Below are positions 23,601-44,924 of a stretch of 64,000 nucleotides of DNA, in pieces. A program made the position numbers and the translations under genes. Within the stretch, counting starts at the first letter, position 1. Each line of letters opens with the position of its first letter. The notes beneath the pieces were generated by a model that was not told where the DNA came from, ran no database searches, and worked only from the letters and a program-made list of their open reading frames with translations. Origin of the DNA: Anolis carolinensis (lineage: Eukaryota); NCBI RefSeq assembly GCF_035594765.1, contig NW_026943823.1, positions 1,550,001 to 1,614,000 on the forward strand, in the 5' to 3' direction.

Positions 23601-25389
23601 CCTTTGTGATCAACAAAAACATAACCATCAAAGCGATCCCTGAACAGAACTATGTCTTCTTGGTTTTTAAAGTTGATGTATGCTCTGGAAAACATGTGAG
23701 GGTACAAACTGCAGAAGGACAGAAAATGGCAATGTATAAGGAAACGTCGCTGAGTGATGACTGTAAATATACAAAAACACAAGACGGGTGTAAAACTGAA
23801 AGACATAAATGACATGCCACCGTTACATGCAATACAACTAAAGGTTGAAAGGTCCTCTCACCTGGTGTCGTTAGCAAAGAACTCAAAATAGTCGTGTTCT
23901 GGCAAAGGCTGGAGATGTTCTTCAAGCTGCTCCTTAGTTAAGCTGGGAGGGAGGCGTCGAATCACCACCTGCAAGAGGAAGTGTCCATTTTTACAAACAT
24001 CTGCACCTGTCAAATACATTGTTGCAAATACAGTAGAGTCTCACTTATCCAAGCTAAACGGGCCGGCAGAACCTTGGATAAGCGAATATCTTGGATAATA
24101 AAGAGGGATTAAAGAAACGCCTAGAATCATAGAATAGTAGAGTTGGAAGAGGCCTATTAAACATCAAATTAGGTTATGATTTTGCAAATTAAGCACCAAA
24201 ACATCATGTTATGGACAGAAAAAGTAGTTCAATACGCAGTAATGTTATGTTGTAATTACTGTATTTACGAATTTAGCACCAAAAGATCACAATGTATTGA
24301 AAACATTGAGTAAAAAAATGCGTTGGATAATCCAGAATGTTGGATATATGAGACTCTACTGTATATTGCAATATTATTAGTAATATTACATGTAATATTA
24401 TCTATATATATATAAGAGTGATGGCATCAGGGCAGCGGACAAAACAACAAAACTACAGGCCCCCCAACCTCGAAATTTGACAACACAACCCATCATTCAT
24501 GGCTCTAGGTTGATACAACAACAAAAAAAAGAAAAATAAAGTCCTAATTACAGGAAGAGGAATAATAGTTTTTATCCAATTGCTGCCAGTTTGAAGGCTA
24601 AGCTCCGCCCACTTGGTCTCCTAGCAACCTCCTCAGCCCAGGGGACAGGCACAGTTAGGCCTCTTTCACAGATTATCTGATTTTAACTGGATTATATGGC
24701 TGTCTAGACTCAAGGCCCTTCCACACAGCTATATAACCCATTTAGAATCTTATATTATCTGCTTTGAACTGGATTATCTTGACTCCACACTGCCATATAA
24801 TCCACTTCAGTGTGCATACTAAACATAAAGATAACCATACAACAGACATTTAATACCAGCACTACCTCAACAATTTCTCACCACCACCAGACAACGCCAC
24901 AGCAACGCGTGGCCGGGCACAGCTAGTATAATATATAATTAACATTATATGCATATACGTATGTATTGACAACATTGAGTACAAAAGTGCATTGGATAAT
25001 CCAGAACCTTGGATAAGCGAGTCTTGGATAAGTGAGACTCTACTGTAGTAATGTAATGCTTATATTGTGCTATGCTCATAATATATTGTATGTACATTTG
25101 ATTTGTAAGCCGCTCTGAGTCCCCTCCGGGGTGAGAAGAGCGGGATATAAATGTAGTAAATAAATAAATCACATTCAAAGCACCCCTGACAGATGGCCAG
25201 CCCGCCTCTGCTTACACGCCTCTCCTCTTCCCCATCTCCCCGCTGCGCCCTGACCTTGCTGAGGAGCTCCTTCTTGTCGCGGGGCCTGTCTCCGGGCCTG
25301 TCGGGCTCTCCTCCGGCCTTGGCGTCCGCGCCGCCGCCCACCGCCATCCGCTTCTCCTTGGGCCTCGCGTTCTCCTTGCCTTCCTTCAT
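16565..25389 (-). CDS. UPF3B: Regulator of nonsense transcripts 3B (~472 aa); exons 25255-25389, 23862-23968, 23602-23708, 22229-22327, 21878-21988, 20947-20990, 20434-20622, 19776-19957, 18196-18493, 16565-16711
   Basis: RRM-like VVIRRLPPSLTKEQL, RAYINFKNQEDIVLFRDRFDGYVF, IVEFAPFQK, KKTTPLL and the EJC-binding DRIRNKDRPAMQLYQPGARSR. Exons sum to 1419 nt in frame. Intron 3 needs a GC donor; the exon-8 donor is the least certain boundary. Confidence 0.96.
16894..17307 (+). mobile_element. R4/Dong-clade non-LTR retrotransposon 3' fragment (restriction-like endonuclease), in (TAA)n
   Basis: Translates HNTPDITVV..IINIAIPGD..EKLSRYQDLKIELQRLW..VVPVVMGTLGA; flanked by TAA repeats. Confidence 0.8.
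24031..24361. mobile_element. Tc1/mariner MITE
   Basis: TIRs and TA flanks. Confidence 0.8.
24401..24926 (+). mobile_element. Non-autonomous Helitron
   Basis: A|TCTATATATA ... GCCACagcaacgcGTGGC cgggcacagCTAG|T. Confidence 0.8.
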
Positions 25390-25786
25390 CCTCGACGCAG
25401 CAGCCAGGCCCAACAACAACAAGGCCGCGCCGCCCGCCTTCCTCTCGCGAGAGCCTGCTCCCTCATCCCCATAGCAACACCTACGGAAGTGACGTAGGCC
25501 CCTCTCTCGGTCTCCGCGGTTTTTCGATCGCTATAGCAACAGCAGCGGAAGTGACGTCACAGCGGGTGGGAAAGTCACAACGAGTCCGGCTTTTCATCCC
25601 CATAGCAACAGCTGCGGAAGTGACGCCACGACGGGGAAAGAGAGGGCGGAGAGGAAGTTTGCGTAAGTAAACAAGGTCCTCCTTCCGCCTCCTGCCCGCT
25701 CCTCTCGCGAGACTTGTCTAGGCCGCAACGGTTGGAAGTTGGCGCCTGCGCAGTGCTGCCCTTGGCTGAGGGAAGGAGAAGGCGAG
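25390..25786. promoter_or_regulatory. Bidirectional CpG-island promoter of UPF3B and NDUFA1
   Basis: The two ATGs are ~400 bp apart. TCTCGCGAGA at 25443 and 25703; three atagcaac..CGGAAGTGACG modules; NRF1-like gcgcctgcgca at 25742. Confidence 0.85.
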
Positions 25787-27538
25787 ATGTGGTACGAGAT
25801 CCTTCCGAGCCTGGGCGTGATGTACGTCTGCCTCAACATCCCGGGCATCTCCACCATGATCATCCAGAAGTACACCAACGGAAACAAGGTCAGCCCGGCT
25901 CCCTGGGTCGCCCCGGCAACCCTGAGGCAATTCTGGGGCGGTTGGGTTGAGGGAGGGAGGTAGGCCCAGGGCATCAGCATAATCCTAGTGGTAGTCATAA
26001 TCAGGGATAGAAATAAATACATAATAATAATAATAATAATAGGATACTAACACATCTATATATATATAAAAGGGTAATGAAATTTCGGCCTAGGACAAAA
26101 CAACAAAACTACACATCCCAGAAACACTAAACTTGGCAGCACAACCCCTCATCCATGCCTCTACGTTCATACAACAAAAAGAAAAGAAATATAAAGTCCT
26201 AATTACAGGGAGATAAATAATTGTTTTTATCCAATTGCTGCCAGTTAGAAGGCTAAGCTCTGCCCACTTGGTCTCCTAGCAACCCACTCAGCCCTGGGGA
26301 CAGGCAGAGTTAGACCTCCCTTAGGCCTCTTCCACACTGCCTATAAAATTCGGATTATCAGATTTTAACTGGATTATATGGCAGTGTAGACTCAAGGCCC
26401 TTCCACACAGCTATATAACCCGTTTATAATCTTATATTATCTGCTTTGAACTGGATTATCTTGACTCCGCACTGCCATATAATCTACTTCAGTGTGCATT
26501 TTATCCAGCTGTGTAGAAGGGGCCTCATATAATCCAGTTCTAAGCAGATAATAAAGGATTATAAATATACAGTACAGTCTCACTTATCCAACATAAACAC
26601 CCCGGCAGAACGTTGGATAAGTGAATATGTTGGATAATAAGAAGGGATTCAGGAAAAGCCGATTAAACATCAAATTAGGTAATAATTATACAAATTAAGC
26701 ACCAAAACATCGTGTTATACAACAAATTTGACAGAAAAAGTAGTTGCATGCACAGTAATATTATGTAGTAATTACTGTATTTACGAATTTAGCACCCAAA
26801 TATCACGATATATAGAAAACATTGACTACAAAAATGGCTTGGATAATCCAGAAGCTTGGATAAGCGAGTCTTGGATAAGTGAGACTCTACTGTATGTGTT
26901 ATCCCTTGACACGTTTTCCCTACTCATTTCTGTGGCCCAGGAGAAGCGCATTGCCCGGACCACCTACCAGTGGCACCTGATGGAAAGAGACAGGCGGGTT
27001 TCTGGAACTGACCGCTACTTCGAGTCCAAGGTAAGTAATGAAAAGATTAAAATGCCACATGTTTGCCTTGGTCACAGAGAGGAGTTCCTGATTTGAAATG
27101 GCTATTTCCTGTTTAATTGTACAGTCTTTACTTTGAAAGGAGTTGTGTTGCCAATTATGTTTGTTTGGGACTCTATGAGATTCATTGAAAAACTAGAGCG
27201 AAACGTGCTGCAGGACGTCCCTTCTGCAAAGACAACTTTTTCTGCACTTTAATATACTTTTCCCATGTTTTTATGATAGAACCAATTAGGAAATGACATT
27301 TATAACCCAGGAACAAAAATTGCATTGCATAGTGTTATAGAATGCCTTGCTGTTTGATTGTAAAATCAGAATGTTACTCTAGGAGTGAGATTAAGGAACG
27401 TAATATCTTGGAAGATTTCAGTTGCTAAACCTGGTTGTATAATTTCACTTGAGAGTAGCAGCGTTATGAATGTTGTAACAGACTGGCATATTTTGTCATA
27501 TTTTTTTTATTTTTCAGGGCTTGGAGAATATTGATTAA
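25787..27538 (+). CDS. NDUFA1: NADH:ubiquinone oxidoreductase subunit A1 (70 aa); exons 25787-25888, 26941-27030, 27518-27538
   Basis: [34 protein letters not shown]|[30 protein letters not shown]|GLENID*; GT-AG introns. Confidence 0.97.
26055..26892 (+). mobile_element. Helitron 5' portion (26055-26569) followed by a Tc1/mariner MITE (26570-26892)
   Basis: TC start and body shared with the other Helitron copies; MITE TIRs. Confidence 0.75.
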
Positions 27539-27716: not shown

Positions 27717-28253
27717 GAGAGTACTTGTCTCTGTCTGTGGTGTCCATAACTCATGGGACATTACCTAAAAAATGTAACCATGCTTTTGGTTGTTTTCCAA
27801 GTTGCAGCGCTGACATTCAAATGCAAATGAATGCATAGTATGGAAACAAGCCATCTTTTGTGTAAAATGTGAAAGACTTCATTCAGAGATCGATCTAAAT
27901 AATTAAGATGGTGAAAATTATATTTATTTAGCTTCAAAACATGGCCGGGAGAAATAAAGGAGGAGGCAGCAATCCATCATTACCAAACAACGAACCCGTG
28001 ATGTTGTTCATTCCATCTTTTGAAGGCCGTAGATGCAGTGTGGCAATTATATATTAGTTTCCCCTTTTGCGGTATAGTTAAATATGCATAATTCTATAGC
28101 AATAGACCTGGTTACAGCAGGAAGCATAGCTGAGGATGTATGCTAATTGTAATGACATGCGGCAACAAAGCTTTGGGGGTATTGGGGGTATGTCTTCTGC
28201 TTGATTGACTAATATTAATAATGTATATAGTATAGATCTCAATGCACTGGTTT

Positions 28254-28810
28254 CTAATTGTATCCCAGCAAACTCAGGAACAGAGAGAAGACCATGACTC
28301 CATTGATGGCTCTTGCAAAGGACATTCCTCCACATGTTGCATCTTTGTCTGTCATATTGGAAAGGAAAGGAAATGTTATTTATCAGAGGTAAACATTACG
28401 GAGAATAATAATACATATATTTTAAAAGCGTCCCAGATCCTCCAGAGTTGCCCAAGGTTAAAGCATCAGACCAAACAAAAGCAAATAATAATAAAACCCT
28501 ATATTGGGTTAATAATAATAAATAATATTATTAATAAATAATAATAAAACCCTAGCATTGCAACGGGACTACTGTCTTGGCTACCTACCTCCCCCTAATT
28601 ATAGGTCGCACTACTCGCACTTTTGGCCCAGTTTGTTTTAGGTTCTTTTCAGGATTTTATCAATGTATGATTTTTGTATATGGGATCTTATTTGTTTTTA
28701 TTGATCTGTTTTTGTATTGTGAGTTTTATATTGTCTGTTTCGTCTGGGCGTGGCCCCATGTAAGCCGCCCTGAGTCCCTTCGGGGAGATGGGGCAGAGTG
28801 TAAAAATAAA

Positions 28811-28863
<53 letters not shown>

Positions 28864-31800
28864 CTGCCCTATCTCCCAAAATAATTCTCCCAAACAGAGC
28901 TTGGAAGCAAAATGGTGTAAATAACAGAGAGAGTCCTTGTGGAGAAAAAAAGGGAGCATGCTTGTTCCATCAATGTTTAACATTTACACAAACAACTAGC
29001 CACTACCAGAAGGGACAGAAAGTTTATTTATTATTATTTATTTATTTACTACATTTATATCCCGCTCTTCTCACCCCGAAGGGGACTCAGAGCGGCTTAC
29101 AAATCAAATGAACATACAATATATTATTAGCATAGCACAATATGAGCATTAAATTACTATATTGTATTATATCATTATATGGTAATATTATTAGTGATAT
29201 TACATTTAATATATAATATATAATTAATATTATTATATTGTACTAGCTGTGCCCGGCCACGCGTTGCTGTGGCAAAGTGGTGGTGGTATTGGTTAAAAAT
29301 TGTTGTGTAATTTTTATTTGATGTTATTTGCAATTTTTTTATTAATTTTATTGTAAGTTATATTTTTATTTATTATATTTTATTATTTTCTTGTATTATT
29401 TTTAGTTATTTTATGTTATTATAGTATTTTATTGTATTAATTTTTAGTGTTTTTTATTTATTTATTTTTTTGAGGTTGCTAGGAGACCAAGTTGGAGGAG
29501 CTTAACCTTCTAACTGGCAGCAATTGGATAAAACCAATTATTCCTCTCTCTCTAATTAGGACTTTGTTTTTCTTTTCTTTTTGTTGTATCAACCTAGAGG
29601 CGTGGATGACGGGTTGTGTTGTCAAATTTCGAGGTTGGGGGGCCTGTAGTTTTGTTGTTTTGTCGGTCGCCGTGATGCCATCACTCTTTTATGGATATAG
29701 ATTATTAGAAGTATAATATTGTATTCCATTATCAATATTATTGTATCTATATATATATAAAAGAGTGATGGCATCACGGCGACCCACAAAACAACAAAAC
29801 TACAGACCCCCCAACCTCGAAATTTGACAACACAACCCATCATCCACGCCTCTAGGTTGATACAACAAAAAGAAAAGAAAAATAAAGTCCTAATTAGAGG
29901 GAGAGCAATGATTGTTTTTATCCTATTGCTGCCAGTTTAGAGGGCTAATCTCTGCCCACTTGGTCTCCTAGCAACCAACTCAGCCCAGGGGACAGGCAGA
30001 CTTAGGCCTCACTTAGGCTTCTTCCACAGATTATCTAATTTGCACTGGATTATATGGCAGTGTAGACTCAAGGCCTTTCCACACAGCTATATAACCCATT
30101 TATAATCTTATATTATCTGCTTTGCACTGGATTATCTTGACTCCACACTACCATATAATCCACTTCAGTGTGCATTTTATCCAGCTGGGAAGAAGGGCCT
30201 CATATAATCCAGTTCTAAGCAGATAATATAAGATTATCAATATACAATATACAATTCCTCAATACTTTATTTCCCATACCACCATACTTCGCCACAGCAA
30301 CGCGTGGCCGGGCACAGCTAGTATACATATAATATTATCAATATTATATGTATATACAATATATATTTCATCTATGCTGACGATCGTGCCATCACCACTC
30401 AAGCAGGAAGCTTTGAAATGGTTGAGGAGAAGCTCTTCGAAGCTTTAGGTGCTCTTACTGCCTATTACAGGAGAAACCAGCCAATTCCTAATCCATCTAA
30501 AACGCAGACGTGTGCTTTTCATTGTAAGAACAGACAAGAAGCACAGGAAGCAAACCTTAAGGAGCACTACGACCAAAATGCAGCAAAAGGTAACAGTGCA
30601 AGCTCTTATATTTGCAAATGGGACCATGGTTTCAAACCGTAAAACGGGGATTCACTCACTTTTCCAAACCACTTTGGACTTCACGTCGGTCCAGTAGACG
30701 TCGTAAGACTGGGCCACGGTTGCTCTGGATCAATAGGAAAAGGGAAAGCATGTTGGCAAAGCATTCTATCAATGCAAATGGTATTGTAAAATAAAACTCT
30801 GATGCAGAAATATCGATCCTCTAATGACTCCCTGAACAACAAATCCCACGATTCCGTAGCATTGAGCCATGATAGCCAAAGTAGGCTTAAACTGCATTAA
30901 TTCTGTAATGTAGATGCATCCCATGAGGTCTGTAATAAGCATGGAATTGGAAAAGGTGCAAATGAATTTTTGGTCAATTTGCCTTTTGTTCATAATTGGG
31001 AAGTATGAAAGTACAGAAGAGTCTCACTTATCCAACACTCGCTTATCCAACGTTCTGGATTATCCAACGCATTTTTGTAGTCAATGTTTTCAATACATCG
31101 TGATATTTTGGTGCTAAATTCGTAAATACAGTAATTACTACATAGCATTACTGCGTATCGAACTACTTTTTCTGTCAAATTTGTTGTCTAACATGATGTT
31201 TTGGTGCTTAATTTGTAAAATCATAACCTAATTTGATGTTTAATAGGCTTTTCCTTAATCTCTCCTTATTATCCAACATATTCGCTTATCCAACGTTCAG
31301 CCGGCCCGTTTACGTTGGATAAGTGAGACTCTACTGCAGGGGTCCCCAAACTTTTTAAGCAGGGGGCCGGTCCACAATCCTTAAGACTCTTGAGGGGCCG
31401 AATTATCATTTGAAAAAAAATACAAACAAATTCCTATGCATACTGCACATGTCTTATTTGTAGTGCAACAACAACAACAACAACGAAAGAACAATACAAT
31501 ATTTAAAAATGAAAACAATTTTAACCAACATAAACCTATTAGGATTTCAACGGAAAGTGTGGGCCTGCTACTGGCCAATGAGATACTCAAGTTAATTAGG
31601 ATTGTTGTTGTTGTTGTTGTGTGCCTTCAAGTCATGTCAGATTTTGGCCGAGCCTAAGTCTAAAATTAATTATTTATTTACTGCATTTATTTACTACATT
31701 TATATCCCACCCTTCTCACCCCGAAGGGGACTCAGAGCAGCTGTATGTAAATACAATATATTATGGGAAAGTAATGAACTAGCCAAATAGCGAGAGAACC

Positions 31801-32548
31801 TTTTGTAACACCAGAATTTACACTAAAGTGTAAACAATTTCCCAATAAACCCATTACAAAGCTTCAACACGTAACTTACACAAACAGCACTACTTTAGGG
31901 CAGTCTTTGTCGGGCGGAAGCCATGTATAATTCGCCTCTTTGGTTTTCAAGTTGGTGTTGGAATGAGTGACTGCGACATCCGGTCGTCCAAAACACTGCA
32001 AAAGGGGAAACACCCATTGAGTTCTTGTGTCTTTTAAAACAAGGTTCAGATCTGTCGCTTTTCTTGGGTCGGGCAGAAATATTGGCCAATGATAGCACTG
32101 AGCCATACCGATTTAATTAACCGGTATATCATCTCTTAATTGAATCAATCGTATTTACAGAGGTTATGCTCGGATCCTTTTGCTTTAAGCTCAGGTGGTT
32201 GGAGGCAACCGTCAGATCAGGATGAAGATATTCAGGGACTTGGACTATAATGGCTCTTACCTCTAATAGTCTGGTGTTGTTGGGAGGAGTTTGCCATGAA
32301 CCCAATGCAACCGGGGAACCAAATGTCCGGGCCTCCAGCAGCACGCCTCTGTATTCGGACCCGGTGATCTGAACTGGAGAAAGATGATGATAATGATGAT
32401 GATGATAATAATAATAATAATAATAATACATAATAATAATAATACATCACACAGTCCTAGACACTTGGGAAGTGTTCGACTTGTGGTTTTGTGAAACGAA
32501 ATCCAGCATGACTATCTTGTGTGCTGTGTCATACAACATCGTTGTGTC

Positions 32549-32591
<43 letters not shown>

Positions 32592-32920
32592 TTACTGTAT
32601 TGGAATATGTATGTGTGTGTGTGTGTGTATGTTTCATGGAAAGGCAGGAAATTAAAGTTTGATTGAAAAGCTGTGGACATATCAAGAATCATTTCATCCC
32701 TAACTATACATATATAAGTATGTGTATACACACACACACATACTGTATTGGATATATATATATACACACACACACACACATATATACACACATATGTATG
32801 GAAGAGGGAGTGTCAATGTTTGAACAACTGTCGACATATCAAGAATAACTTCATTGTGTCCCTAACCATACACACACTATTTTCTCTCTTTCTTTCTCTC
32901 TATGTGTATGTGTGTGTGTG

Positions 32921-32952
<32 letters not shown>

Positions 32953-33844
32953 TATACATACATACACACACTCTATTCTCTCTGTCTTTCTATACATACA
33001 CATATGTATATACATATATATATACATATGCATATATACACACAAACTATATCCTCTGTGTGTGTATACACACACACTNNNNNNNNNNNNNNNNNNNNNN
33101 NNNNNNNNNNNNNNNNNNNNNNNNNNNNNNNNNNNNNNNNNNNNNNNNNNNNNNNNNNNNNNNNNNNNNNNNNNNNNNNNNNNNNNNNNNNNNNNNNNNN
33201 NNNNNNNNNNNNNNNNNNNNNNNNNNNNNNNNNNNNNNNNNNNNNNNNNNNNNNNNNNNNNNNNNNNNTGTGTGTGAATAGAAAAGGTAAAGGTTTCTCC
33301 TGACGTTAAGTCCAGTCGTGACCGACTCTGGGGGTTGGTGCTCATCTCCATTTCTAAGCCGAAGAGCCGGCGTTGTCCGTAGACATCTTCAAGGTCATGT
33401 GGCCATTGGCATGACTGCATGGAGCGCCGTTACCTTCCCGCTGGAGCAGTACCTATTGATCTACTCACATTGGCATGTTTTTGAACTGCTAAGTTGGCAG
33501 GAGCTGGAAATTTGGTTAATAAATTTCATGGAAGGGCAAGGAGTCAACGTTTGATCGAACAGCTGTGGACATACCAAGAATAACTTTATTTCATTGCTCT
33601 AAGAATAACAACAACGGCAAGGCAAGGAACACTTACCACTGATGGGCTGACCCTTTGAGAAAGAGGGTGCGCTGGCCAGGATCTGGAAAGGGGCCGGAGA
33701 GGTCTGGGGCTGGGTCCCCGGGTGCAAAGGCAACATGTTTCCGCAGGCCGAGGAAGGTGCGCCGTCGGGAAAGGCGTGATGCGAACCGAGTCTGGTCCAA
33801 AGGACCGAGAATCCAAAAAGAAGGGAGAGATTCCGCAGAGACAT
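28254..33844 (-). CDS. Stand-alone reeler-domain protein (198 aa) with signal peptide and GPI-type C-terminus; exons 33637-33844, 32261-32373, 31880-31995, 30660-30724, 28254-28348
   Basis: All introns GT-AG, phases consistent, 597 nt in total. Reeler motifs FPDGAPSSACGNMLPLH, YRGVLLEART, LGSW, C..VAVTHS..K, YTWLPP, FVATVAQSYDVYW; hydrophobic tail GVMVFSLFLSLLG. Confidence 0.88.
29243..29701 (-). mobile_element. Non-autonomous Helitron
   Basis: CTAG plus hairpin at 29243, TC at 29701 on the minus strand. Confidence 0.8.
29746..30321 (+). mobile_element. Non-autonomous Helitron
   Basis: A|TC ... GC hairpin ... CTAG|T. Confidence 0.8.
30367..30545 (+). mobile_element. LINE reverse-transcriptase fragment (probably Vingi/Ingi-like)
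   Basis: FIYADDRAITTQ...NPSKTQTCAFH: YADD catalytic motif and NPSKT motif. Confidence 0.7.
31014..31336. mobile_element. Tc1/mariner MITE, 323 bp
   Basis: TIRs of the same family. Confidence 0.8.
31337..31600 (+). mobile_element. hAT (Charlie / OposCharlie1-like) non-autonomous fragment
   Basis: CAGGGGTCCCCAAACTTTTTAAGCAGGGGGCC ... aacaaattcctatgcatactgcacatgtcttattt; right boundary approximate. Confidence 0.6.
33079..33268. other. Assembly gap (N run) inside (CA/TA)n microsatellite
   Basis: Run of N. Confidence 1.
33281..33507 (-). mobile_element. Sauria SINE (partial)
   Basis: aaaaggtaaaggttt tail and the conserved core, as at 1666. Confidence 0.8.
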
Positions 33845-34183
33845 GATCCCCAGAGAAGAGCTCAGAAGCCAGAATGAATCCCGTGAGTTTGGAGAGAAAA
33901 CTTTGAAACAAAAGGGTTCACAGACCCGTAACAGAAGCATTTCCAGCCCACATCACATGTCCTTTACGCCGGAGATTGTGGTTATTCTTATAGTTTCAAC
34001 ATAAGTGAAATAAATGGATTTTTGGGGAATAAACCAAGCTTGCAGGACTTTCTCTGCTTCAAAAGATACCTTTTTCCAAACTTACATGTTTGTTATCTTG
34101 CTACGGTACTCCCCCCACAATGATTTATAGTTCACCAAGAGACTTCAAGCAAATAATATGATTTTATGAATACTTCACAACCT

Positions 34184-35124
34184 CTGAGGTGCCTGACGTG
34201 GATGTGGGTGAAACGTCAGGAAAGAATGCTGCTGGAACATGGCCATACACTGAGGATGCCTGCCATAGATGTGGGTGAAATGTCAGGAGAAAATGCTTCT
34301 GGAACATGGTCATACACTGAGGATGCCTGTCATAGATGTGGGCGAAACGTCAGGAGAGAATGCTTCTGGAACATGGCCATACGCTGAGGATGCCTGCCAT
34401 AGATGTGGGTGAAACGTCAGAAGAGAATGCTTCTGGAACATGGCTATACACTGAGGATGCCTGCCATAGATGTGGGTGAAACGTCAGGAGAGAATGCTGC
34501 TGGAACATGGCTGTACACTGAGGATGCCTGCCATAGATGTGGCTGAAACGTCAGGAGAGAATGCTGCTGGAACATGGCCATACACTGAGGATGCCTGCCA
34601 TAGATGTGGGTGAAACGTCAGGAGAAAATGCCGCTGGAACATGGCTGTACACTGAGGATGCCTGCCATAGATGTGGGTGAAAAGTCAGGAGAGAATGCTG
34701 CTGGAACATGGCCATACACTGAGGATGCCTGCCATAGGTGTGGCCGAAACGTCAGGAAAGGATGCTGCTGGAGCATGGCCATACACTGAGGATGCCTGCC
34801 ATAGATGTGGGTGAAATATCAGGAGAGAATGCTGCTGGAACATGGCCATACACTGAGGATGCCTGCCATAGATGTGGGTGAAACGTCAGGAGAAAATGCC
34901 GCTGGAACATGGCTGTACACTGAGGATGCCTGCCATAGATGTGGGTGAAAAGTCAGGAGAGAATGCTGCTGGAACATGGCCATACACTGAGGATGCCTGC
35001 CATAGGTGTGGCCGAAACGTCAGGAAAGGATGCTGCTGGAGCATGGCCATACACTGAGGATGCCTGCCATAGATGTGGGTGAAATATCAGGAGAGAATGC
35101 TGCTGGAACATGGCCATACACTGA
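34184..35124 (+). repeat. Tandem array of 14 x 67 bp derived from a Penelope-like element; each unit carries hammerhead core boxes
   Basis: ctgagg(a) starts at 34184, 34250, 34317, 34384, 34451, 34518, 34585, 34652, 34719, 34786, 34853, 34920, 34987 and 35054; the last eight units are two copies of a 268-bp block. Confidence 0.95.
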
Positions 35125-35466: not shown

Positions 35467-35854
35467 TATATGCATCAAAATGTAACTTGAAGACAGCTAC
35501 CTCTCTATGTCCCGGGTTGCATAATCCATTAGGAAAGGGAACCATGGCCAAGATCCCTCCAGCCATTTCCCAAGACAGATAACTCCCTGAACCATTGCGT
35601 ATATATGCAGATAAATCAGGCATGGTCAAACTTTGGCCCTTGATTTCAAGTGTATACTGAGAGTGCAGTGTATATCTTTTGTTTAGGAACCGAAGCAGTA
35701 ATAATTCTCTTAAAAAAAGAAGAGCGTGCCCTCTTTCGCTCTTTCTGCAAGACAATCCACCACGAAAGAACTAGATTTAGCGTGGAAATGGATTGGAGCA
35801 GAAAGCCAGATTTCCTGTCACAAGCAGCAGAAGGAAAAGAGAGGAGATGAAATA

Positions 35855-37136: not shown

Positions 37137-37369
37137 TACTTCTATAGACTAATTGATTGAAAGTTCTAGTTGTTAAAAGTTCTACGTTGTTAAAGAGTGG
37201 GTTGTTGCATTGCTCATCGCGATTGTTGCTTTTCATTGATTGCTCAAAAGTCAAATTTTGGGGTAAATTTTCAACCCCTCCCAGCTTGTGCTTCTGGTTA
37301 TGGGCCCGGCTGGCTGTGCCACAAAGCGCCACGGTTTTTCTCCTTTAAGAGCATTGGGGCTGCCGTTCT

Positions 37370-37500
37370 GTTGGCGGAACAGCCGTTGCCGCGGTGATGA
37401 TTGTGACCCAACACTTGAGTCGCGGAAGCCGTCCAGTCAATGGCTTAATGTGGGAACCAGCGGATATCGGAAAGGAGTCGGCGGAGAGAGCTTTGCACAG
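37370..37500 (+). promoter_or_regulatory. Candidate AKAP14 promoter and non-coding exon 1
   Basis: CpG-rich patch, X-box-like gttgccgcggtgat (~37385), cggaag, donor cag|gtaatt at 37500/37501; an acceptor lies at 39853, just before the AKAP14 ATG. Confidence 0.4.
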
Positions 37501-38024
37501 GTAATTCCGTTGCCAGGAGCAGAGGGAAGGCTTGGCATCCATCCCGTGTTCCTTGATGAAACAATTGGGCATCCACTTCGTGTTATGTATTATGATTGGC
37601 ATCTATGGCGGAGAGGGTCCTGGGAACGGGAGACGTGAATGCAAACGAAAGAGCCTTTCACCCGTGACATTTTAGACATCGTTTCTGCAAATGCATGCCT
37701 TAAATGCCTCGAAGCATCCACTGGGTGAATCAGGCAGGAGTGCATTTGCAAGCACAGATATCAACCAGGCAGACTAAAACACACTTGGCATGCAAAAGGC
37801 CTTGCTCAATCCACAGCAGGTAGAAATTTTCTTCGATTAGTATCCCAACAGCATCAGGTAGAATGAAAGAAAATGGTTAAAACATGCCTCTGTTAACAAA
37901 GCCTCCATCAGTGACATTGCTTTCCAGAAAGTCTCTAACCCCTAACCCCAATCTCACCTTTTGCTCTGCATCCTATGTCTACCTGGAGGGTTTTTTCCAG
38001 CAGCATCTACTTAGTTGCATGATG

Positions 38025-39741
38025 AGGTCTAGAGGAACTCAGACGTTCATGTTAGGTCCCACCAACCTCTCTGCAAGGTCTGCAGAAACTCAGACGTTCA
38101 TGTTAGGTCCCATCAACTTGTCTGCAAGCTCTAAAGAAACTTAGATTTTCATGTTAGGTCCCATCAACGTGTCTGCAAGGTCTAGAGAAACTCAGACGTT
38201 CATGTTCAGTCCCAGCAATCTCTTTGCAAGGTCTAGAGAAACTCAGACGTTCATGTTAGGTCCTATCAACTTGTCTGCAAGCTCTAAAGAAACTTAGATT
38301 TTCATGTTAGGTCCCATCAACGTGTCTGCAAGGTCTAGAGAAACTCAGACGTTCATGTTCAGTCCCAGCAATCTCTTTGCAAGCTCTAGAGAAACTCAGA
38401 CATTCATGTTAGGTCCCATCAACCTGTCTGCAAGGTTGGAGAAACTTAGATGTTCATGTTAGGTCTCATCAACGTGTCTGCAAGGTCTAGAGAAACTCAG
38501 ACGTTCATGTTCAGTCCCAGCAATCTCTTTGCAAGGTCTGGAGAAACTCAGACATTCATGTTAGGTCCCACCAACCTGTCTGCAAGGTCTAGAGAAACTC
38601 AGACATTCATGTTAGGTCCCATCAACGTGTCTGCAAGGTCTAGAGAAACTTAGATGTTCATGTTAGGTCCCACCAACCTGTCTGCAAGGTCTAGAGAAAC
38701 TCGGACGTTCATGTTAGGTCCCATCAACGTGTCTGCAAGGTCTAGAGAAACTTAGATGTTCATGTTAGGTCCCACCAACCTGTTTGCAAGGTCTAGAGAA
38801 ACTCGGACGTTCATGTTAGGTCCCACCAACCTGTCTGCAAGGTCTAGAGAAACTCAGACATTCATGTTAGGTCCCATCAACGTGTCTGCAAGGTCTAGAG
38901 AAACTTAGATGTTCATGTTAGGTCCCACCAACCTGTCTGCAAGGTCTAGAGAAACTCGGACGTTCATGTTAGGTCCTATCAATGTGTCTACAAGGTCTAG
39001 AGAAACTCGGACGTTCATGTTAGGTCCCATCAACGTGTCTGCAAGGTCTAGAGAAACTTAGATTTTCATGTTAGGTCCCACCAACCTGTCTGCAAGGTCT
39101 AGAGAAACTCAGACGTTCATTTCAGGTCCCATCAACCTGTCTTCAAGGTCTAGAGAAACCCAGACGTTCATGTTAGGTCCCATCAACGTGTCTGCAAGGT
39201 CTAGAGAAACTCAGACGTTCATGTTCAGTCCCAGCAATCTCTTTGCAAGCTCTAGAGAAACTCAGACATTCATGTTAGGTCCCATCAACCTGTCTGCAAG
39301 GTTGGAGAAACTTAGATGTTCATGTTAGGTCTCATCAACGTGTCTGCAAGGTCTAGAGAAACTCAGACGTTCATGTTCAGTCCCAGCAATCTCTTTGCAA
39401 GGTCTGGAGAAACTCAGACATTCATGTTAGGTCCCATCAACATGTCTTCAAGGTCTAGAGAAACTCAGACGTTCATGTTAGGTCCCTCCAACTTGTCTGC
39501 AAGGTCTGGAGAAACTCAGATGTTCATGTCAGGTCCCATCAACCTGTCTTCAAGGTCTAGAGAAACCCAGACGTTCATGTTCAGTCCCACCAACTTGTCT
39601 GCAAGGTCTAGAGAAACTCGGACGTTCACGTTAGGTCTCACCAACTTGTCTGCAAGCTCTAGAGAAACTCAGATGTTCATGTTAGGTCCCATCAACCTAT
39701 CTTCAAGGTCTGGAGAAACTCAGACGTTCATGTTAGGTCCC
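38025..39741. repeat. Minisatellite, 51-bp unit, ~33 copies
   Basis: aggtctagagaaactcagacgttcatgttaggtcccatcaacctgtctgca repeats; 17-aa periodicity in the ORF track. Confidence 0.95.
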
Positions 39742-39863
39742 AGGAACACATCTGCTTCATGAACCAAAGTATACCTGTACATCTAAATTACTTAGCCGTC
39801 AGATTTCCCCGGTGCTTCTGATGCCATGTAATGTATTTTTTCCTCTTTCTAAGAGCGTGAACA

Positions 39864-42800
39864 ATGGACTTGGACAATGAAGACCAAGATGTGGAGGACA
39901 CGAACGAAGAGCTGGAGGCCCTCAAGGAGGAAGCTCTCCTCCTCGTTGACAAAGTGATTAAAGGGGCAACGGACACCGTTAGAGACCTGAAGAAGAAAGA
40001 AGAAGGTGCGGCAAGACAATCTTTGCTGTGTTTCTGGAGCCTTTTTGTTGAGTGTGCTGATATTTACGCTATGGATTTCTCTCCTCAGCTGCAGCTGCCA
40101 AATACAAAATACCCAACATCCAGTGGATGGAGTGCAGAGACTTCACTGTAGGAAAAGGGCTGCTGCAGATCGAGGAATATATGAGAGTAAGGTATCTTTA
40201 GCTATCAATTGGTATAATTAGGACAAAAACGGAGTCCGGATGTACACAAATGACACCGAGTCCTTGATGGAGTACTTCCTCATTCTTCCACACACTGCTG
40301 GAAGGTTTTGTGGTGTCGTAAATTAGTTAAATTAGCCTCCCTGAATAAAGCGGTACCTAAATTTCCTACTCGACAGATGCAACTGTCTTTCGGGCTGCAT
40401 AGTTCAACAGCAAGCTAGACTATTAATGGTCGGGAGCTTACTCCAACCTAGGCTTGCCTTGAACTCATGACCTCTCGGTCAGTAGTGATTTATTACAGCT
40501 GGCTACTAACCAGCTGCGCCCCAGCCTGGTCCTAATGTTTGCTTCTCATGGACTTGGCACAGGGATTTGGTTAACCCAGTGGTTCCCAAACTTATTTGGA
40601 CTGCCGCCCCCTTTCCAGAAAAAATATGACTCAGCACCCCCTGGAATGGAGGTGTGGCTTAGAGGGGTGGGCGTGGCTCCTGCTCAAGAGGGCGGGGCTG
40701 AGCCTCTCCCCAGTCCAAGACGGGAGGGGGAGGGGGAGGTGGGCGGGGCCACAAATGGGCGGCCAGGACTGGGATGGGCGGAGTTACGAGCTCTGAGGCA
40801 GGGCTGAGCTTCTATCCCTGTCCTGGATGCAGGGGGCGGGGCTAGAGGAGAGGGTGGGGCCTCTAGACCCCACGTCCGTGTTCTAACAATTGCCTCAGGG
40901 GAGGTATACAGAGGCTCTTGGGAAGAGGCCCCGCCTCTAGCCCCGCCTTTTAGTCCTCTCCTCTCAGGAGAGTTATAGAGGCTCAGCCCTGTCTCAGGCT
41001 CTTGGAAGGAGGCCCCGCCCCCTGTGTCCCAACAAGCGCCTCAGGAGAGGTATAGACTCTCAGCCCTGTCTCGGGCTCTTGGGAAGAAGCCACACCCACT
41101 CCTCTAGCCCCGCCCTTTAGTCCTAAAAGGCCTCTCAGGAGAGATATAGAGGCTCAGCCCTATCTCAGGCTCTTGGAAGGAGGCCCCACCCCCTTCCCTA
41201 GCTCCGCCCTGTGTCCCAACAAGTGCCTCAGGAGAGGTATAGACTCTCAGCCCTGTCATGGGTTCTTGGGAAGAAGCCACACCCACTCCTCTAGCCCCAC
41301 CCTTTAGTCCTAAAAGGCCTATCAGGAGAAGTATAGAGGCTCAGCCCTGTCTCGTGCTCTTAGGAGGAGGCCCCGCCCCCTTCCCTAGCTCCGCCCTGTG
41401 TCTCAACAAGCGCCTCAGGAGAGGTATAGATGCTCAGCCCTGTCTCAGATTCTTGGGAAGAAGCCACGCCCACTCCTCTAGCCCCGCCCTTTAGTCCTAA
41501 AAGGCCTCTCAGGGGAGATATAGAGGCTCAGCCCTATCTCAGGTTCTTGGAAGGAGGCCCCGCCCCCTTCCCTAGCCCCGCCCTCTGTGTCCCAACAAGA
41601 GCCTCAGGAGAGGTATAGATGCTCAGCCCTGTCTCGGGCTCTTGGGAAGAAGCCACGCCCACTCTAGCCCTGCCCTTTAGTCCTAAAAGGCCTCTCAGGG
41701 GAGATATAGAGGCTCAGCCCTATCTCAGGCTCTTGGAAGGAGGCCCCGCCCCCTTCCCTAGCTCCGCCCTCTGTGTCCTAACAAGGGGAGGTATAGATGC
41801 TCAGCCCTGTCTCAGGCTCTTGGGAAGAAGCCACGCCCACTCCTCTAGCCCCGCCCTTTAGTCCTAAAAGGCCTCTCAGGGGAGATATAGAGGCTCAGCC
41901 CTATCTCAGGTTCTTGGAAGGAGGCCCCGCCCCCTTCCCTAGCCCCGCCCTCTGTGTCCCAACAAGAGCCTCAGGAGAGGTATAGATGCTCAGCCCTGTC
42001 TCGGGCTCTTGGGAAGAAGCCACGCCCACTCTAGCCCTGCCCTTTAGTCCTAAAAGGCCTCTCAGGGGAGATATAGAGGCTCAGCCCTATCTCAGGCTCT
42101 TGGAAGGAGGCCCCGCCCCCTTCCCTAGCTCCGCCCTCTGTGTCCTAACAAGGGGAGGTATAGATGCTCAGCCCTGTCTCAGGCTCTTGGGAAGAAGCCA
42201 CGCCCACTCCTCTAGCCCCGCCCTTTAGTCCTAAAAGGCCTCTCAGGGGAGATATAGAGGCTCAGCCCTATCTCAGGTTCTTGGAAGGAGGCCCCGCCCC
42301 CTTCCCTAGCCCCGCCCTCTGTGTCCCAACAAGAGCCTCAGGAGAGGTATAGATGCTCAGCCCTGTCTCGGGCTCTTGGGAAGAAGCCACGCCCACTCTA
42401 GCCCTGCCCTTTAGTCCTAAAAGGCCTCTCAGGGGAGATATAGAGGCTCAGCCCTATCTCAGGCTCTTGGAAGGAGGCCCCGCCCCCTTCCCTAGCTCCG
42501 CCCTCTGTGTCCTAACAAGGGGAGGTATAGATGCTCAGCCCTGTCTCAGGCTCTTGGGAAGAAGCCACGCCCACTCCTCTAGCCCCGCCCTTTAGTCCTA
42601 AAAGGCCTCTCAGGGGAGATATAGAGGCTCAGCCCTATCTCAGGCTCTTGGAAGGAGGCCCCGCCCCCTTCCCTAGCTCCGCCCTCTGTGTCCTAACAAG
42701 GGGAGGTATAGATGCTCAGCCCTGTCTCAGGCTCTTGGGAAGAAGCCACGCCCACTCCTCTAGCCCCGCCCTTTAGTCCTAAAAGGCCTCTTAGGGGAGA

Positions 42801-44555
42801 TGTAGAGGCTCAGCCCTGTCTCCGGCACTTGGTTTCTTCACTCCACAGACGTGGGAGCTCCACGAAAGCTGGCTGCACTGGATCAACTACCTCAGCGAGG
42901 AAGAGCTCGAGTACAGCACGCGGTACCACTACCGGGTGCGGTGGAGCATCCCCACGTGCCGCAAGCCCATCCCGCGAGCCACGGCCTGCGTCTTCTTCAT
43001 CCTCGAGATTTCCAAAGTCAGGCCTGATGTAAGTGTTCCGCTTCCCAGAGTCACATCCCTTTCGTTCTTTACGGCACAGCATTTAACGACGTCTTCTTTT
43101 CCATTTGCAACAGACTTTGCCCATCGAAGTATACTTTGTGGTGGAGACAAACAAGCTCATTCACAGGTATGTTCACAGGTATTGTGGGAGTTGGGAGTCC
43201 AAAACACCTGGAGGGTCGAAGTTTGACCATGCCAGCGTTAGACGGCCAGCTCTCTCTATCTCTCAGTGCCGATATCTGAATATTTCGAATTCCAAATTCC
43301 AGTTCTGAATATTTCAAATTCCATGAAATACTTACCGTATATACTTGAGTATAAGCTGACCCGAATATAAGCCGAGGCTCCTAATATTACCGCAAAAAAA
43401 CTGGGAAAACATTGACTCCAGTATAAGCTGAGATACCAATAAAATTACCGTATATACTTGAGTATAAGCCGACCCGAATATAAGCCGAGGCACCTAATTT
43501 TACCACAAAAAAACTGGGAAAACATTGACTCCAGTATAAGCCGAGAATGGTAAATTTCAGAAATAAAAATAGATACCAATAAAATTACATGAATTGAGGC
43601 ATTGGTAGGTTCAATGTTTTTGAATATTTACAGAAAGCTCAAATTTAAGATAAGACTGTCCAACTCTAATCAAATCATTATTCTCATCTTCTTCAATGTA
43701 AATGGGCTTATGTATCCTTTTTAATAATAATAAAGTAAAACAATACATGTAATAATAATAATAATAATAATAAATAATACAGGAAAATAATACATGGATA
43801 ATAAATAGAGTAAAATAATAAATATAATAATAATATCAGAGTGAAATAATAAATGTATGAATAATAATAAGATCAAAGTGAAATAATAAATGTATTAATA
43901 ATAATAATAAAAATAGAGTAAAATAAATGTAACAGTAGCAACAATAGAGAAAAATAATAAATGTAATAATACCAATAATAATAGAGAAAAATAATACATG
44001 TAATAACAAAAATAATAAATAATATGGGAAAATAATACATGTAGTAATAAATAGAGTAAAATAATAAATATAATAATAATTAGATCAGAGTGAAATAATA
44101 AATGTATAATAAGATCAGAGTGAAATAATAAATGAATGAATAATAATATGATCAGAGTGAAATAATAAATGTATGAATAATAATAAGATCAAAGTGAAAT
44201 AATAAATGTATTAATAATAGAGTAAAATAAATGTAATAGTAGCAACAATAATAGAGAAAAATAATAAATATAATAATACCAATAATAATAGAGAAAAATA
44301 ATAAATGTACCATATAATCTCGAGTATAAACTGACCCAAATATAAGCCAACCAGGACCCTCATCCGAGTATAAGCTGAGGGGGGCTTTTTCAGTCTTATA
44401 AAAAAGGGCTGAAAAACTAGGCTTATACTCGAGTATATACAGTATTCTCTCTGCTATTTGTCCTTTACAGGCCGGTAGAATCTCGATTTAAAGAAAAATG
44501 GCTCAAAGACGTCATTGAGAGCAAAACTTGCCTGATGGAGATGATCAACTTTTAG
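39864..44555 (+). CDS. AKAP14: A-kinase anchoring protein 14 (~185 aa); exons 39864-40005, 40089-40186, 42849-43028, 43114-43166, 44471-44555
   Basis: Amphipathic helix EALLLVDKVIKGA, NIQWMECRDFTVGKGLLQIEEY, VRWSIPT, LIHRP..RFKEKWLK; GT-AG introns, 558 nt; sits between NDUFA1 and NKAP as in human. An alternative acceptor at 40095 would keep the frame. Confidence 0.92.
40310..40532 (-). mobile_element. tRNA-derived SINE
   Basis: Minus-strand head ggcgcagctggttagtag (A-box-like) ... gagttcaag (B-box-like). Confidence 0.6.
40577..42822. repeat. hAT-type 5' end (CAGTGGTTCCCAAAC at 40577) followed by a GC-rich array of ~92-bp monomers with a 367-bp higher-order repeat
   Basis: Identical ORFs recur at 41430/41797/42164 and 41619/41986/42353 (367-bp spacing). 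Confidence 0.9.
43335..44442. mobile_element. Tc2/pogo-like MITE with a duplicated 5' end and expanded AT-rich interior
   Basis: TA|CCGTATATACTTGAGTATAAGC ... GCTTATACTCGAGTATATACAG|TA; second 5' end near 43448. Confidence 0.75.
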
Positions 44556-44924
44556 TACCGTTGGAACTGCAGTTAGTTAAAAGCTCGTATGCATATTTTC
44601 CTGCTTTTCCTATTTGGAAATAAACATTTCATTCCTCTGTAAGCCAGAGTATGCTGTTTGATTTGCGGATAGTAAAATAAACATAACCTGAAGGTGGTGA
44701 ACCTTGCACTTGGTCAGGGATGGGAGATCGCAGAGGTCAGATCTCCATAGACTGCAACAACATTTGAGTCCACAAAACTGCAATTCTCTGAAATAATTAT
44801 TATTATGCTTATTTGTACCCTGCTTTTTCTTCTCCACAAAGGAGACACATTGGTTATAGTGGATAAGGCTGATGGGAACCATAGTTCACTGTCATCTATA
44901 TGGATAAGTTGCTGAACACTTTCA

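What the first reader, a model, noticed from the sequence alone, without database searches (positions are those of the whole stretch)
28254..33844. Intact reeler-domain-only gene with a predicted GPI anchor, between NDUFA1 and AKAP14
Seen: five GT-AG exons, scattered across unrelated-looking ORF calls, splice into 198 aa: MSLRNLSLLFGFSVLWTRLGSHHA-FPDGAPSSACGNMLPLH...YRGVLLEART...CFGRPDVAVTHSNTNLK...YTWLPPDKDCPKVVLFVATVAQSYDVYWTDVKSKVVWKNKDATCGGMSFARAINGVMVFSLFLSLLGYN. It has a signal-peptide-like N-terminus, one reeler domain, sequons NNT and NYT, four Cys, then small residues (CGG), a spacer and a terminal hydrophobic run. Known: reeler domains occur in reelin, F-spondin and FRRS1, and as stand-alone insect defence proteins (Hdd11/Noduler type); I know of no such gene at this position in human Xq24. 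It lacks the DOMON and cytochrome b561 parts of FRRS1. Inference: a cell-surface protein, possibly with an innate-immune or matrix role, retained in sauropsids and lost from this locus in mammals.
Basis: partly seen in the sequence, partly recalled or inferred. Interest (0 to 1): 0.85.

Follow-up and report, generated by a model that had tools for sequence, protein, structure and literature searches.

The report
Yellow pigment cell reeler protein gene
This intact lizard gene makes a small protein, probably lipid-anchored to the cell surface, that databases mislabel as an insect-type defence protein; its zebrafish counterpart marks yellow pigment cells, and it was not found in birds or mammals, which lack such skin cells.

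Summary
The gene is real: five GT-AG exons on the minus strand (33844-28254), 198 aa, no stops. The assembly gap lies inside intron 1 and does not affect the frame. It has a signal peptide, one reeler domain (Pfam; the fold matches F-spondin) and a GPI-type tail, with dN/dS 0.16-0.24. It is already auto-annotated (UniProt A0A803T7F1; RefSeq orthologues 'putative defense protein 3/Hdd11') but uncharacterised. It is not sauropsid-specific. The AKAP14-reeler-NDUFA1 order holds in lizards, alligator, frog, sturgeon and chimaera, and intron phases are conserved to shark. Protein searches found no mammal and no bird copy; this was not tested in DNA. New reading: the zebrafish orthologue si:dkey-251i10.2 is a published xanthophore marker (89% of cells). 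A same-named goldfish gene tracks yellow skin, and one appears among frog chromatophore genes. Best explanation: a GPI-anchored xanthophore surface protein that binds matrix or neighbouring cells, lost with dermal xanthophores in birds and mammals. The immune reading rests mainly on the transferred name. Untested: RNA splicing, lizard expression and the anchor itself. The scan had not noted this gene on other DNA.

The parts
33637..33844 (-). Exon 1: start codon, signal peptide (aa 1-24), start of reeler domain with Cys34; phase-1 donor
   Evidence: 65/69 identical to P0155; orthologues start at the same ATG
33079..33268 (.). Assembly gap inside intron 1 (32374-33636); not filled; no effect on reading frame
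   Evidence: both sides collinear with Sceloporus
32261..32373 (-). Exon 2 (113 nt): reeler core, sequon N101
   Evidence: same length from shark to lizard and in teleosts
31880..31995 (-). Exon 3 (116 nt): Cys108 (invariant), sequon N129 (not conserved), Cys139
30660..30724 (-). Exon 4 (65 nt): last reeler strands
28254..28348 (-). Exon 5 (95 nt): Cys173 as predicted omega site, polar spacer, hydrophobic tail, stop
   Evidence: anchor inferred, not tested
33845..34090 (-). Conserved upstream non-coding region. Holds an aligned E-box (33954-33959) and an in-frame upstream ATG (33940) not conserved in orthologues. The AP-1/ARE-type element that many orthologues carry is absent here, its place being an alignment gap
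27904..28253 (-). Putative 3' UTR with blocks conserved in Sceloporus; candidate AATAAA at 27923-27928 (not conserved)
25783..27032 (+). Neighbour NDUFA1, coding exons 1-2 (convergent with the reeler gene)
39744..44641 (+). Neighbour AKAP14 (divergent from the reeler gene)
   Evidence: against the AKAP28-family gene of locus L010

Best explanation
An ancient vertebrate single-reeler-domain protein. The signal peptide takes it into the ER; the tail after about Cys173 is cut off and replaced by a GPI anchor. This leaves a roughly 150-residue, glycosylated, disulfide-bonded beta-sandwich on the outer membrane face. It is made mainly by xanthophores (yellow pigment cells), where it binds matrix glycans or a partner on neighbouring cells, as the F-spondin reeler domain does, and helps place, shape or maintain these cells. 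It was lost separately in birds and mammals, the two lineages that lost dermal xanthophores. Shown: gene, fold, selection, synteny, tail architecture, zebrafish expression (published). Inferred: the anchor, expression in lizard xanthophores, the binding role, and the two losses.
For: Gene and selection: (mature region dN/dS 0.19 vs Sceloporus, 0.16 vs Podarcis, 0.24 vs alligator; bootstrap upper bounds at most 0.40). Fold: AlphaFold pLDDT 86, ordered to about Cys173 then a disordered spacer and a terminal helix; Foldseek top 8 hits are F-spondin reeler, E 1e-7 to 4e-6. Tail: all 43 complete orthologues end in a hydrophobic run, none has two or more K/R in the last 6 residues, tail conservation 0.44 vs 0.74 for the domain, omega-type triplet in 38/43 vs 58% background. 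Orthology to si:dkey-251i10.2: several hits carry that UniRef name; one of them, the arowana gene, lies beside AKAP14 and a ZBTB33-like gene and is 47% identical, against 29% for FRRS1; the family forms one group in the tree, 90/91. Expression: zebrafish xanthophore marker, specificity 0.69, 89% of cells, clustered with thy1, gch1, plin6, pax7b, scarb1 (PMC6588384 suppl. file 2). Goldfish 'putative defense protein 3' FPKM 0 in white, 23 in yellow, 9.5 in brown skin (PMC9854719). DFP1 among tree-frog chromatophore featured genes (PMC11640764). No bird or mammal among the hits, nor among the 30 exhaustive-search hits whose names were looked up.
Against: The zebrafish protein was not fetched, so orthology goes through database names. 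The goldfish and frog genes match by name only, and the frog legend does not say which chromatophore. A cichlid hdd11-like gene is under-expressed in egg-spots. The zebrafish data cover neural-crest cells only, and three other zebrafish supplements had no mention. Both homologue lists stop at 70 and also lack salamanders, lungfish and coelacanth, so absence from them is not proof. No binding data exist for any vertebrate member.
Confidence: 0.45

Rival explanations
1. Surface-tethered innate-immune protein of skin, gill or gut that binds microbial polysaccharides and limits biofilms, like arthropod reeler-only proteins.
For: PcReeler binds polysaccharides and bacteria and blocks biofilm (PMC10149183). 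Tick PIXR and shrimp LvReelers act similarly. Salmon fin hdd11 falls about 25-fold with sea lice (PMC7177938). A stress-type AP-1/ARE element lies 86-121 nt upstream in 5 of 12 loci vs 1.8% background.
Against: The name is transferred from insects by similarity. No vertebrate antimicrobial assay was found. Cell-level data point to xanthophores. Birds and mammals keep barrier immunity yet seem to lack the gene.
Confidence: 0.25
2. The protein works inside the xanthophore rather than on it: it is sorted to the lumen of the pterinosome (a lysosome-related organelle) as a matrix scaffold or as a free reeler partner of a cytochrome b561, mirroring the reeler-DOMON-b561 fusion of FRRS1.
For: Very abundant in xanthophores, mean expression 3.07, second highest of the 20 marker rows read; cyb561a3b is in the same expression cluster. 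Vertebrate FRRS1 reeler is a related domain.
Against: No cytosolic tail for sorting signals, and GPI proteins go mostly to the surface (general knowledge). No localisation data.
Confidence: 0.15
3. The tail is a short membrane span, or the protein is simply secreted, rather than GPI-anchored.
For: Median uncharged C-terminal stretch is 19 residues; the omega triplet rule has a high background (58%); lacertid, alligator and tuatara tails fit Cys173 less well. No dedicated GPI predictor could be run.
Against: No basic stop-transfer residues or cytosolic tail in any of 43 orthologues; low tail conservation; modest 19-residue hydropathy (1.66 here).
Confidence: 0.13
4. A pseudogene, a chance splice of unrelated ORFs, or a broken piece of FRRS1.
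For: Single-exon Pfam scores are below the cut-off; a gap interrupts intron 1; the Anolis branch is long.
Against: Exon lengths and phases conserved to shark, dN/dS about 0.2, synteny in seven genomes, separate tree position, no DOMON or b561 nearby.
Confidence: 0.02

Closest known systems
Vertebrate 'putative defense protein 3/Hdd11' orthogroup (zebrafish si:dkey-251i10.2; Anolis UniProt A0A803T7F1)
   Same: Same gene: exons 2-5 identical to the Anolis entry, same neighbours, same intron phases.
   Different: The database entry starts 32 codons upstream, at an ATG not conserved in orthologues, and differs at 4 residues of exon 1; at positions 26, 28 and 33 the window has the family-typical residues. 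No functional study found.
Arthropod reeler-only defence proteins (Noduler/Hdd11, BmReeler1, PIXR, PcReeler, LvReelers)
   Same: Signal peptide plus a single reeler domain.
   Different: Noduler and PIXR are described as short or secreted proteins; this family has a conserved hydrophobic C-terminal tail. Orthology not shown; microbe binding not tested.
FRRS1 (SDR2) ferric-chelate reductase
   Same: Related N-terminal reeler domain, 29% identical to a newt FRRS1.
   Different: No DOMON or cytochrome b561, so no redox activity of its own; separate locus and separate tree group.
F-spondin and reelin N-terminal reeler domains
   Same: Same fold (Foldseek probability 1.0, TM about 0.55-0.68).
   Different: 17-19% identity; those are parts of large secreted matrix proteins.
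Thy-1 (mode of anchoring only)
   Same: Small one-domain GPI protein; from my own knowledge, its anchor sits on a disulfide-bonded Cys, as proposed here for Cys173. Co-expressed in zebrafish xanthophores.
   Different: Ig fold, no homology claimed.

Membership tests
Reeler domain (PF02014) | Pfam score above gathering threshold over the whole profile | tested here: met
   P0155 93.5 bits vs 21, profile 1-131; window exons collinear on the profile
Reeler domain (PF02014) | F-spondin-like beta-sandwich fold | tested here: met
   (model of P0155 residues 57-230)
si:dkey-251i10.2 / vertebrate DFP3 orthogroup | Position beside AKAP14 and/or NDUFA1 | tested here: met
   not kept in Cottoperca or a cyprinid
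si:dkey-251i10.2 / vertebrate DFP3 orthogroup | Five exons, phases 1,0,2,1 | tested here: met
si:dkey-251i10.2 / vertebrate DFP3 orthogroup | One group in a tree, apart from FRRS1 | tested here: met
   support 90/91 (below the starred level), one side of a branch in 100% of bootstrap trees; midpoint root only
si:dkey-251i10.2 / vertebrate DFP3 orthogroup | Direct comparison with the zebrafish protein | not tested
   zebrafish sequence not returned; link through UniRef names
GPI-anchored proteins | N-terminal signal peptide | tested here: met
   hydropathy and alignment of the cleavage region; no SignalP available
GPI-anchored proteins | Omega triplet, spacer, terminal hydrophobic run, no cytosolic tail | tested here: met
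   rule-based only; the triplet alone is weak evidence
GPI-anchored proteins | Anchor attached (PI-PLC release) | not testable with these tools
   bench test
FRRS1 | DOMON and cytochrome b561 domains | tested here: not met
Noduler/Hdd11 insect defence proteins | Soluble protein ending with the reeler domain | tested here: not met
   conserved hydrophobic tail
Noduler/Hdd11 insect defence proteins | Infection-induced, binds microbes | not testable with these tools
   no vertebrate data found
Xanthophore genes | Enriched in xanthophores of this species | not testable with these tools
   shown for zebrafish only
Xanthophore genes | Absent from birds and mammals | tested here: inconclusive
   no hit; genome-level synteny not testable

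The most novel reading that the evidence does not exclude
A xanthophore-specific surface or pterinosome protein, kept for over 400 million years and lost twice with dermal xanthophores, that is a missing component of yellow-cell patterning or of the pigment organelle (a PMEL-like role for pterinosomes).
Probability: 0.25. Interest if true: 0.75.

Novelty: new variant of a known kind. Interest (0 to 1): 0.52.

Why it matters
The surface and organelle proteins that are special to xanthophores are poorly known compared with those of melanocytes. An abundant xanthophore marker with a predicted anchor, a known fold and a distribution that matches the cell type is directly testable by a zebrafish knockout. 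It would give reptile, amphibian and fish colour studies a candidate they now pass over as an immune gene. A double loss in birds and mammals would be a clean case of gene loss following loss of a cell type. The gene model itself is not new.

Tried and rejected
Word-index search with exon 1 in its open frame: blank. The joined protein was built only in scripts, to check the frame and for dN/dS; it was not searched. Searches went exon by exon, then with tool-returned proteins. The gap was not filled. The upstream ATG at 33940 was rejected as the main start because it is not conserved. FRRS1 fragment and pseudogene readings were rejected. E-box and M-box motifs upstream were not above background. 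Supplements of anole, gecko and three zebrafish papers held no mention. A paper search for convergent loss found nothing on this gene. No turtle locus was on record.
Full report
Observation. The five exons are present as described, on the minus strand: 33637-33844, 32261-32373, 31880-31995, 30660-30724 and 28254-28348. All introns are GT-AG, with phases 1, 0, 2, 1, and the 597 nt give 198 aa without internal stops. The gap at 33079-33268 is inside intron 1, so it cannot affect the frame; I did not fill it. Exons 1, 2 and 3, searched apart, hit only Pfam Reeler at consecutive profile positions. Both sides of the gap are collinear with the Sceloporus locus, and a 60-nt local repeat has copies on both sides. 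Splicing is therefore supported by comparison, not by RNA.

Identity. An exhaustive search with exon 1 gave squamate and turtle proteins on top. Searches with these returned a family named 'putative defense protein 3/Hdd11' or 'Si:dkey-251i10.2' in lizards, snakes, tuatara, turtles, alligator, frogs, sharks, rays, chimaera, sturgeon and teleosts, with a lamprey relative. P0155, Anolis carolinensis UniProt A0A803T7F1, is identical in exons 2-5 and 65/69 in exon 1. So the window is that species or a very close one, and the gene is already auto-annotated. The order AKAP14, reeler, NDUFA1 is kept in Podarcis, Sceloporus, alligator, Pelobates, sturgeon and Callorhinchus (which has a tandem pair). 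A horn shark keeps the NDUFA1 side and arowana the AKAP14 side. Internal exons of 113, 116 and 65 nt recur from shark to lizard. The mature region has dN/dS 0.16-0.24 against three reptiles. In a tree of reeler domains the family is one group (90/91), roughly follows the species tree and lies apart from vertebrate FRRS1. There is no DOMON or b561 in the protein or the window.

Anatomy. AlphaFold on the database protein gives pLDDT 86: a beta-sandwich ordered up to about Cys173, a disordered spacer and one terminal helix. The best structural matches are F-spondin reeler domains. Cys34 and Cys108 are invariant or nearly so. Cys139 and Cys173 are both present in 23 sequences, both absent in 36 and unpaired in 8, which suggests a second disulfide, though kin share such traits. 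All 43 complete orthologues end in a hydrophobic run with no basic cytosolic tail, and the tail is far less conserved than the domain. This is the pattern of a cleaved GPI signal, with Cys173 the best omega site. The triplet rule alone is weak (58% background) and no predictor was available; I put the anchor at about 0.8.

Distribution. Neither list of 70 proteins holds a bird or a mammal, although far more distant teleosts are found and both groups have very many annotated proteomes (my own knowledge). None of the 30 exhaustive-search hits that I had named was a bird or mammal either. The lists may be capped and also lack salamanders, lungfish and coelacanth, so loss is likely but unproven: about 0.9 for mammals and 0.8 for birds. 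If true, these are two separate losses, since alligator keeps the gene.

Function. The name comes from arthropod proteins that bind microbes and block biofilms (PMC10149183, PMC5543126, PMC12113285). I found no such test for a vertebrate member. Vertebrate expression points elsewhere. In zebrafish neural-crest single-cell data si:dkey-251i10.2 is a xanthophore marker: specificity 0.69, 89% of cells, grouped with thy1, gch1, plin6, pax7b and scarb1 (PMC6588384). A goldfish 'putative defense protein 3' is at 0 FPKM in white, 23 in yellow and 9.5 in brown skin, beside perilipin, slc2a11 and GCH genes (PMC9854719). DFP1 is among the featured chromatophore genes in tree-frog skin (PMC11640764). Birds and mammals are the vertebrates without dermal xanthophores (own knowledge), which fits the distribution. 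Against this, a cichlid hdd11-like gene is lower in egg-spots, the goldfish and frog links are by name only, and fish have other reeler-only genes. The 25-fold drop in louse-infested salmon fin fits either reading.

Upstream region. A TGA(C/G)TCAGC element lies 86-121 nt before the start codon in Podarcis, alligator, horn shark, sturgeon and a cyprinid: 5 of 12 loci against 1.8% of random windows, noticed after the fact. It resembles an AP-1 or NRF2-MAF site. It is degenerate in Sceloporus and absent in this window, and the Anolis protein branch is long, so regulation may have shifted in anoles.

Verdict. A real, conserved, database-annotated but unstudied gene. The most likely mechanism (0.45) is a GPI-anchored xanthophore surface protein binding matrix or neighbouring cells. 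Rivals are a barrier-immunity role (0.25), a role inside the pigment organelle (0.15) and a non-GPI tail (0.13). It works like the F-spondin reeler domain in fold. It is not an FRRS1, and it fails the soluble-protein feature of the Noduler type. I found no paper describing a GPI-anchored reeler-only vertebrate protein or this loss pattern, within a library that lacks most subscription journals. Interest 0.52.

Noticed in passing
window 34184-35124: 14 x 67-bp tandem array about 340 bp upstream of the start codon. Units hold hammerhead core words on the + strand, opposite to the reeler transcript. Probably derived from an Anolis Penelope-like element, a family known to carry hammerheads (PMC11167929); no direct comparison made. 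No Rfam hit at gathering score; folding not better than shuffles.
   Followed up: partly
L008 10001-24904: Callorhinchus has two tandem reeler genes (236 and 205 aa) between AKAP14 and NDUFA1.
   Followed up: no
window 33746-33835: Database protein P0155 differs from the window at residues 4, 26, 28 and 33. The window keeps the family-typical residues at 26, 28 and 33, so the older reference may hold errors or another allele.
   Followed up: partly
window 29250-30314: About 1.1-kb inverted-repeat element in intron 4, with nested arms (188 nt at 94%, outer 29 nt at 97%); looks like a non-autonomous DNA transposon.
   Followed up: partly
window 38025-39742 and 41015-42000+: Long tandem arrays (51 bp x 34 just before AKAP14; 94/187-bp units inside it).
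   Followed up: no
window 25250-25900: UPF3B and NDUFA1 start head to head about 400 bp apart; no RNF113A-like motif was seen in the window, whereas from memory human has RNF113A between them.
   Followed up: partly
proteins P0083, P0075, P0074, P0141, P0049, P0086: Other reeler-only proteins, several with hydrophobic tails: an FRRS1-like group in fish, a Denticeps/Erpetoichthys group and a mollusc group. The architecture may have arisen or been kept several times.
   Followed up: partly
window 35765-35832 and 37352-37557: Non-coding blocks conserved with Sceloporus and Podarcis between the reeler gene and AKAP14; candidate regulatory elements.
   Followed up: no
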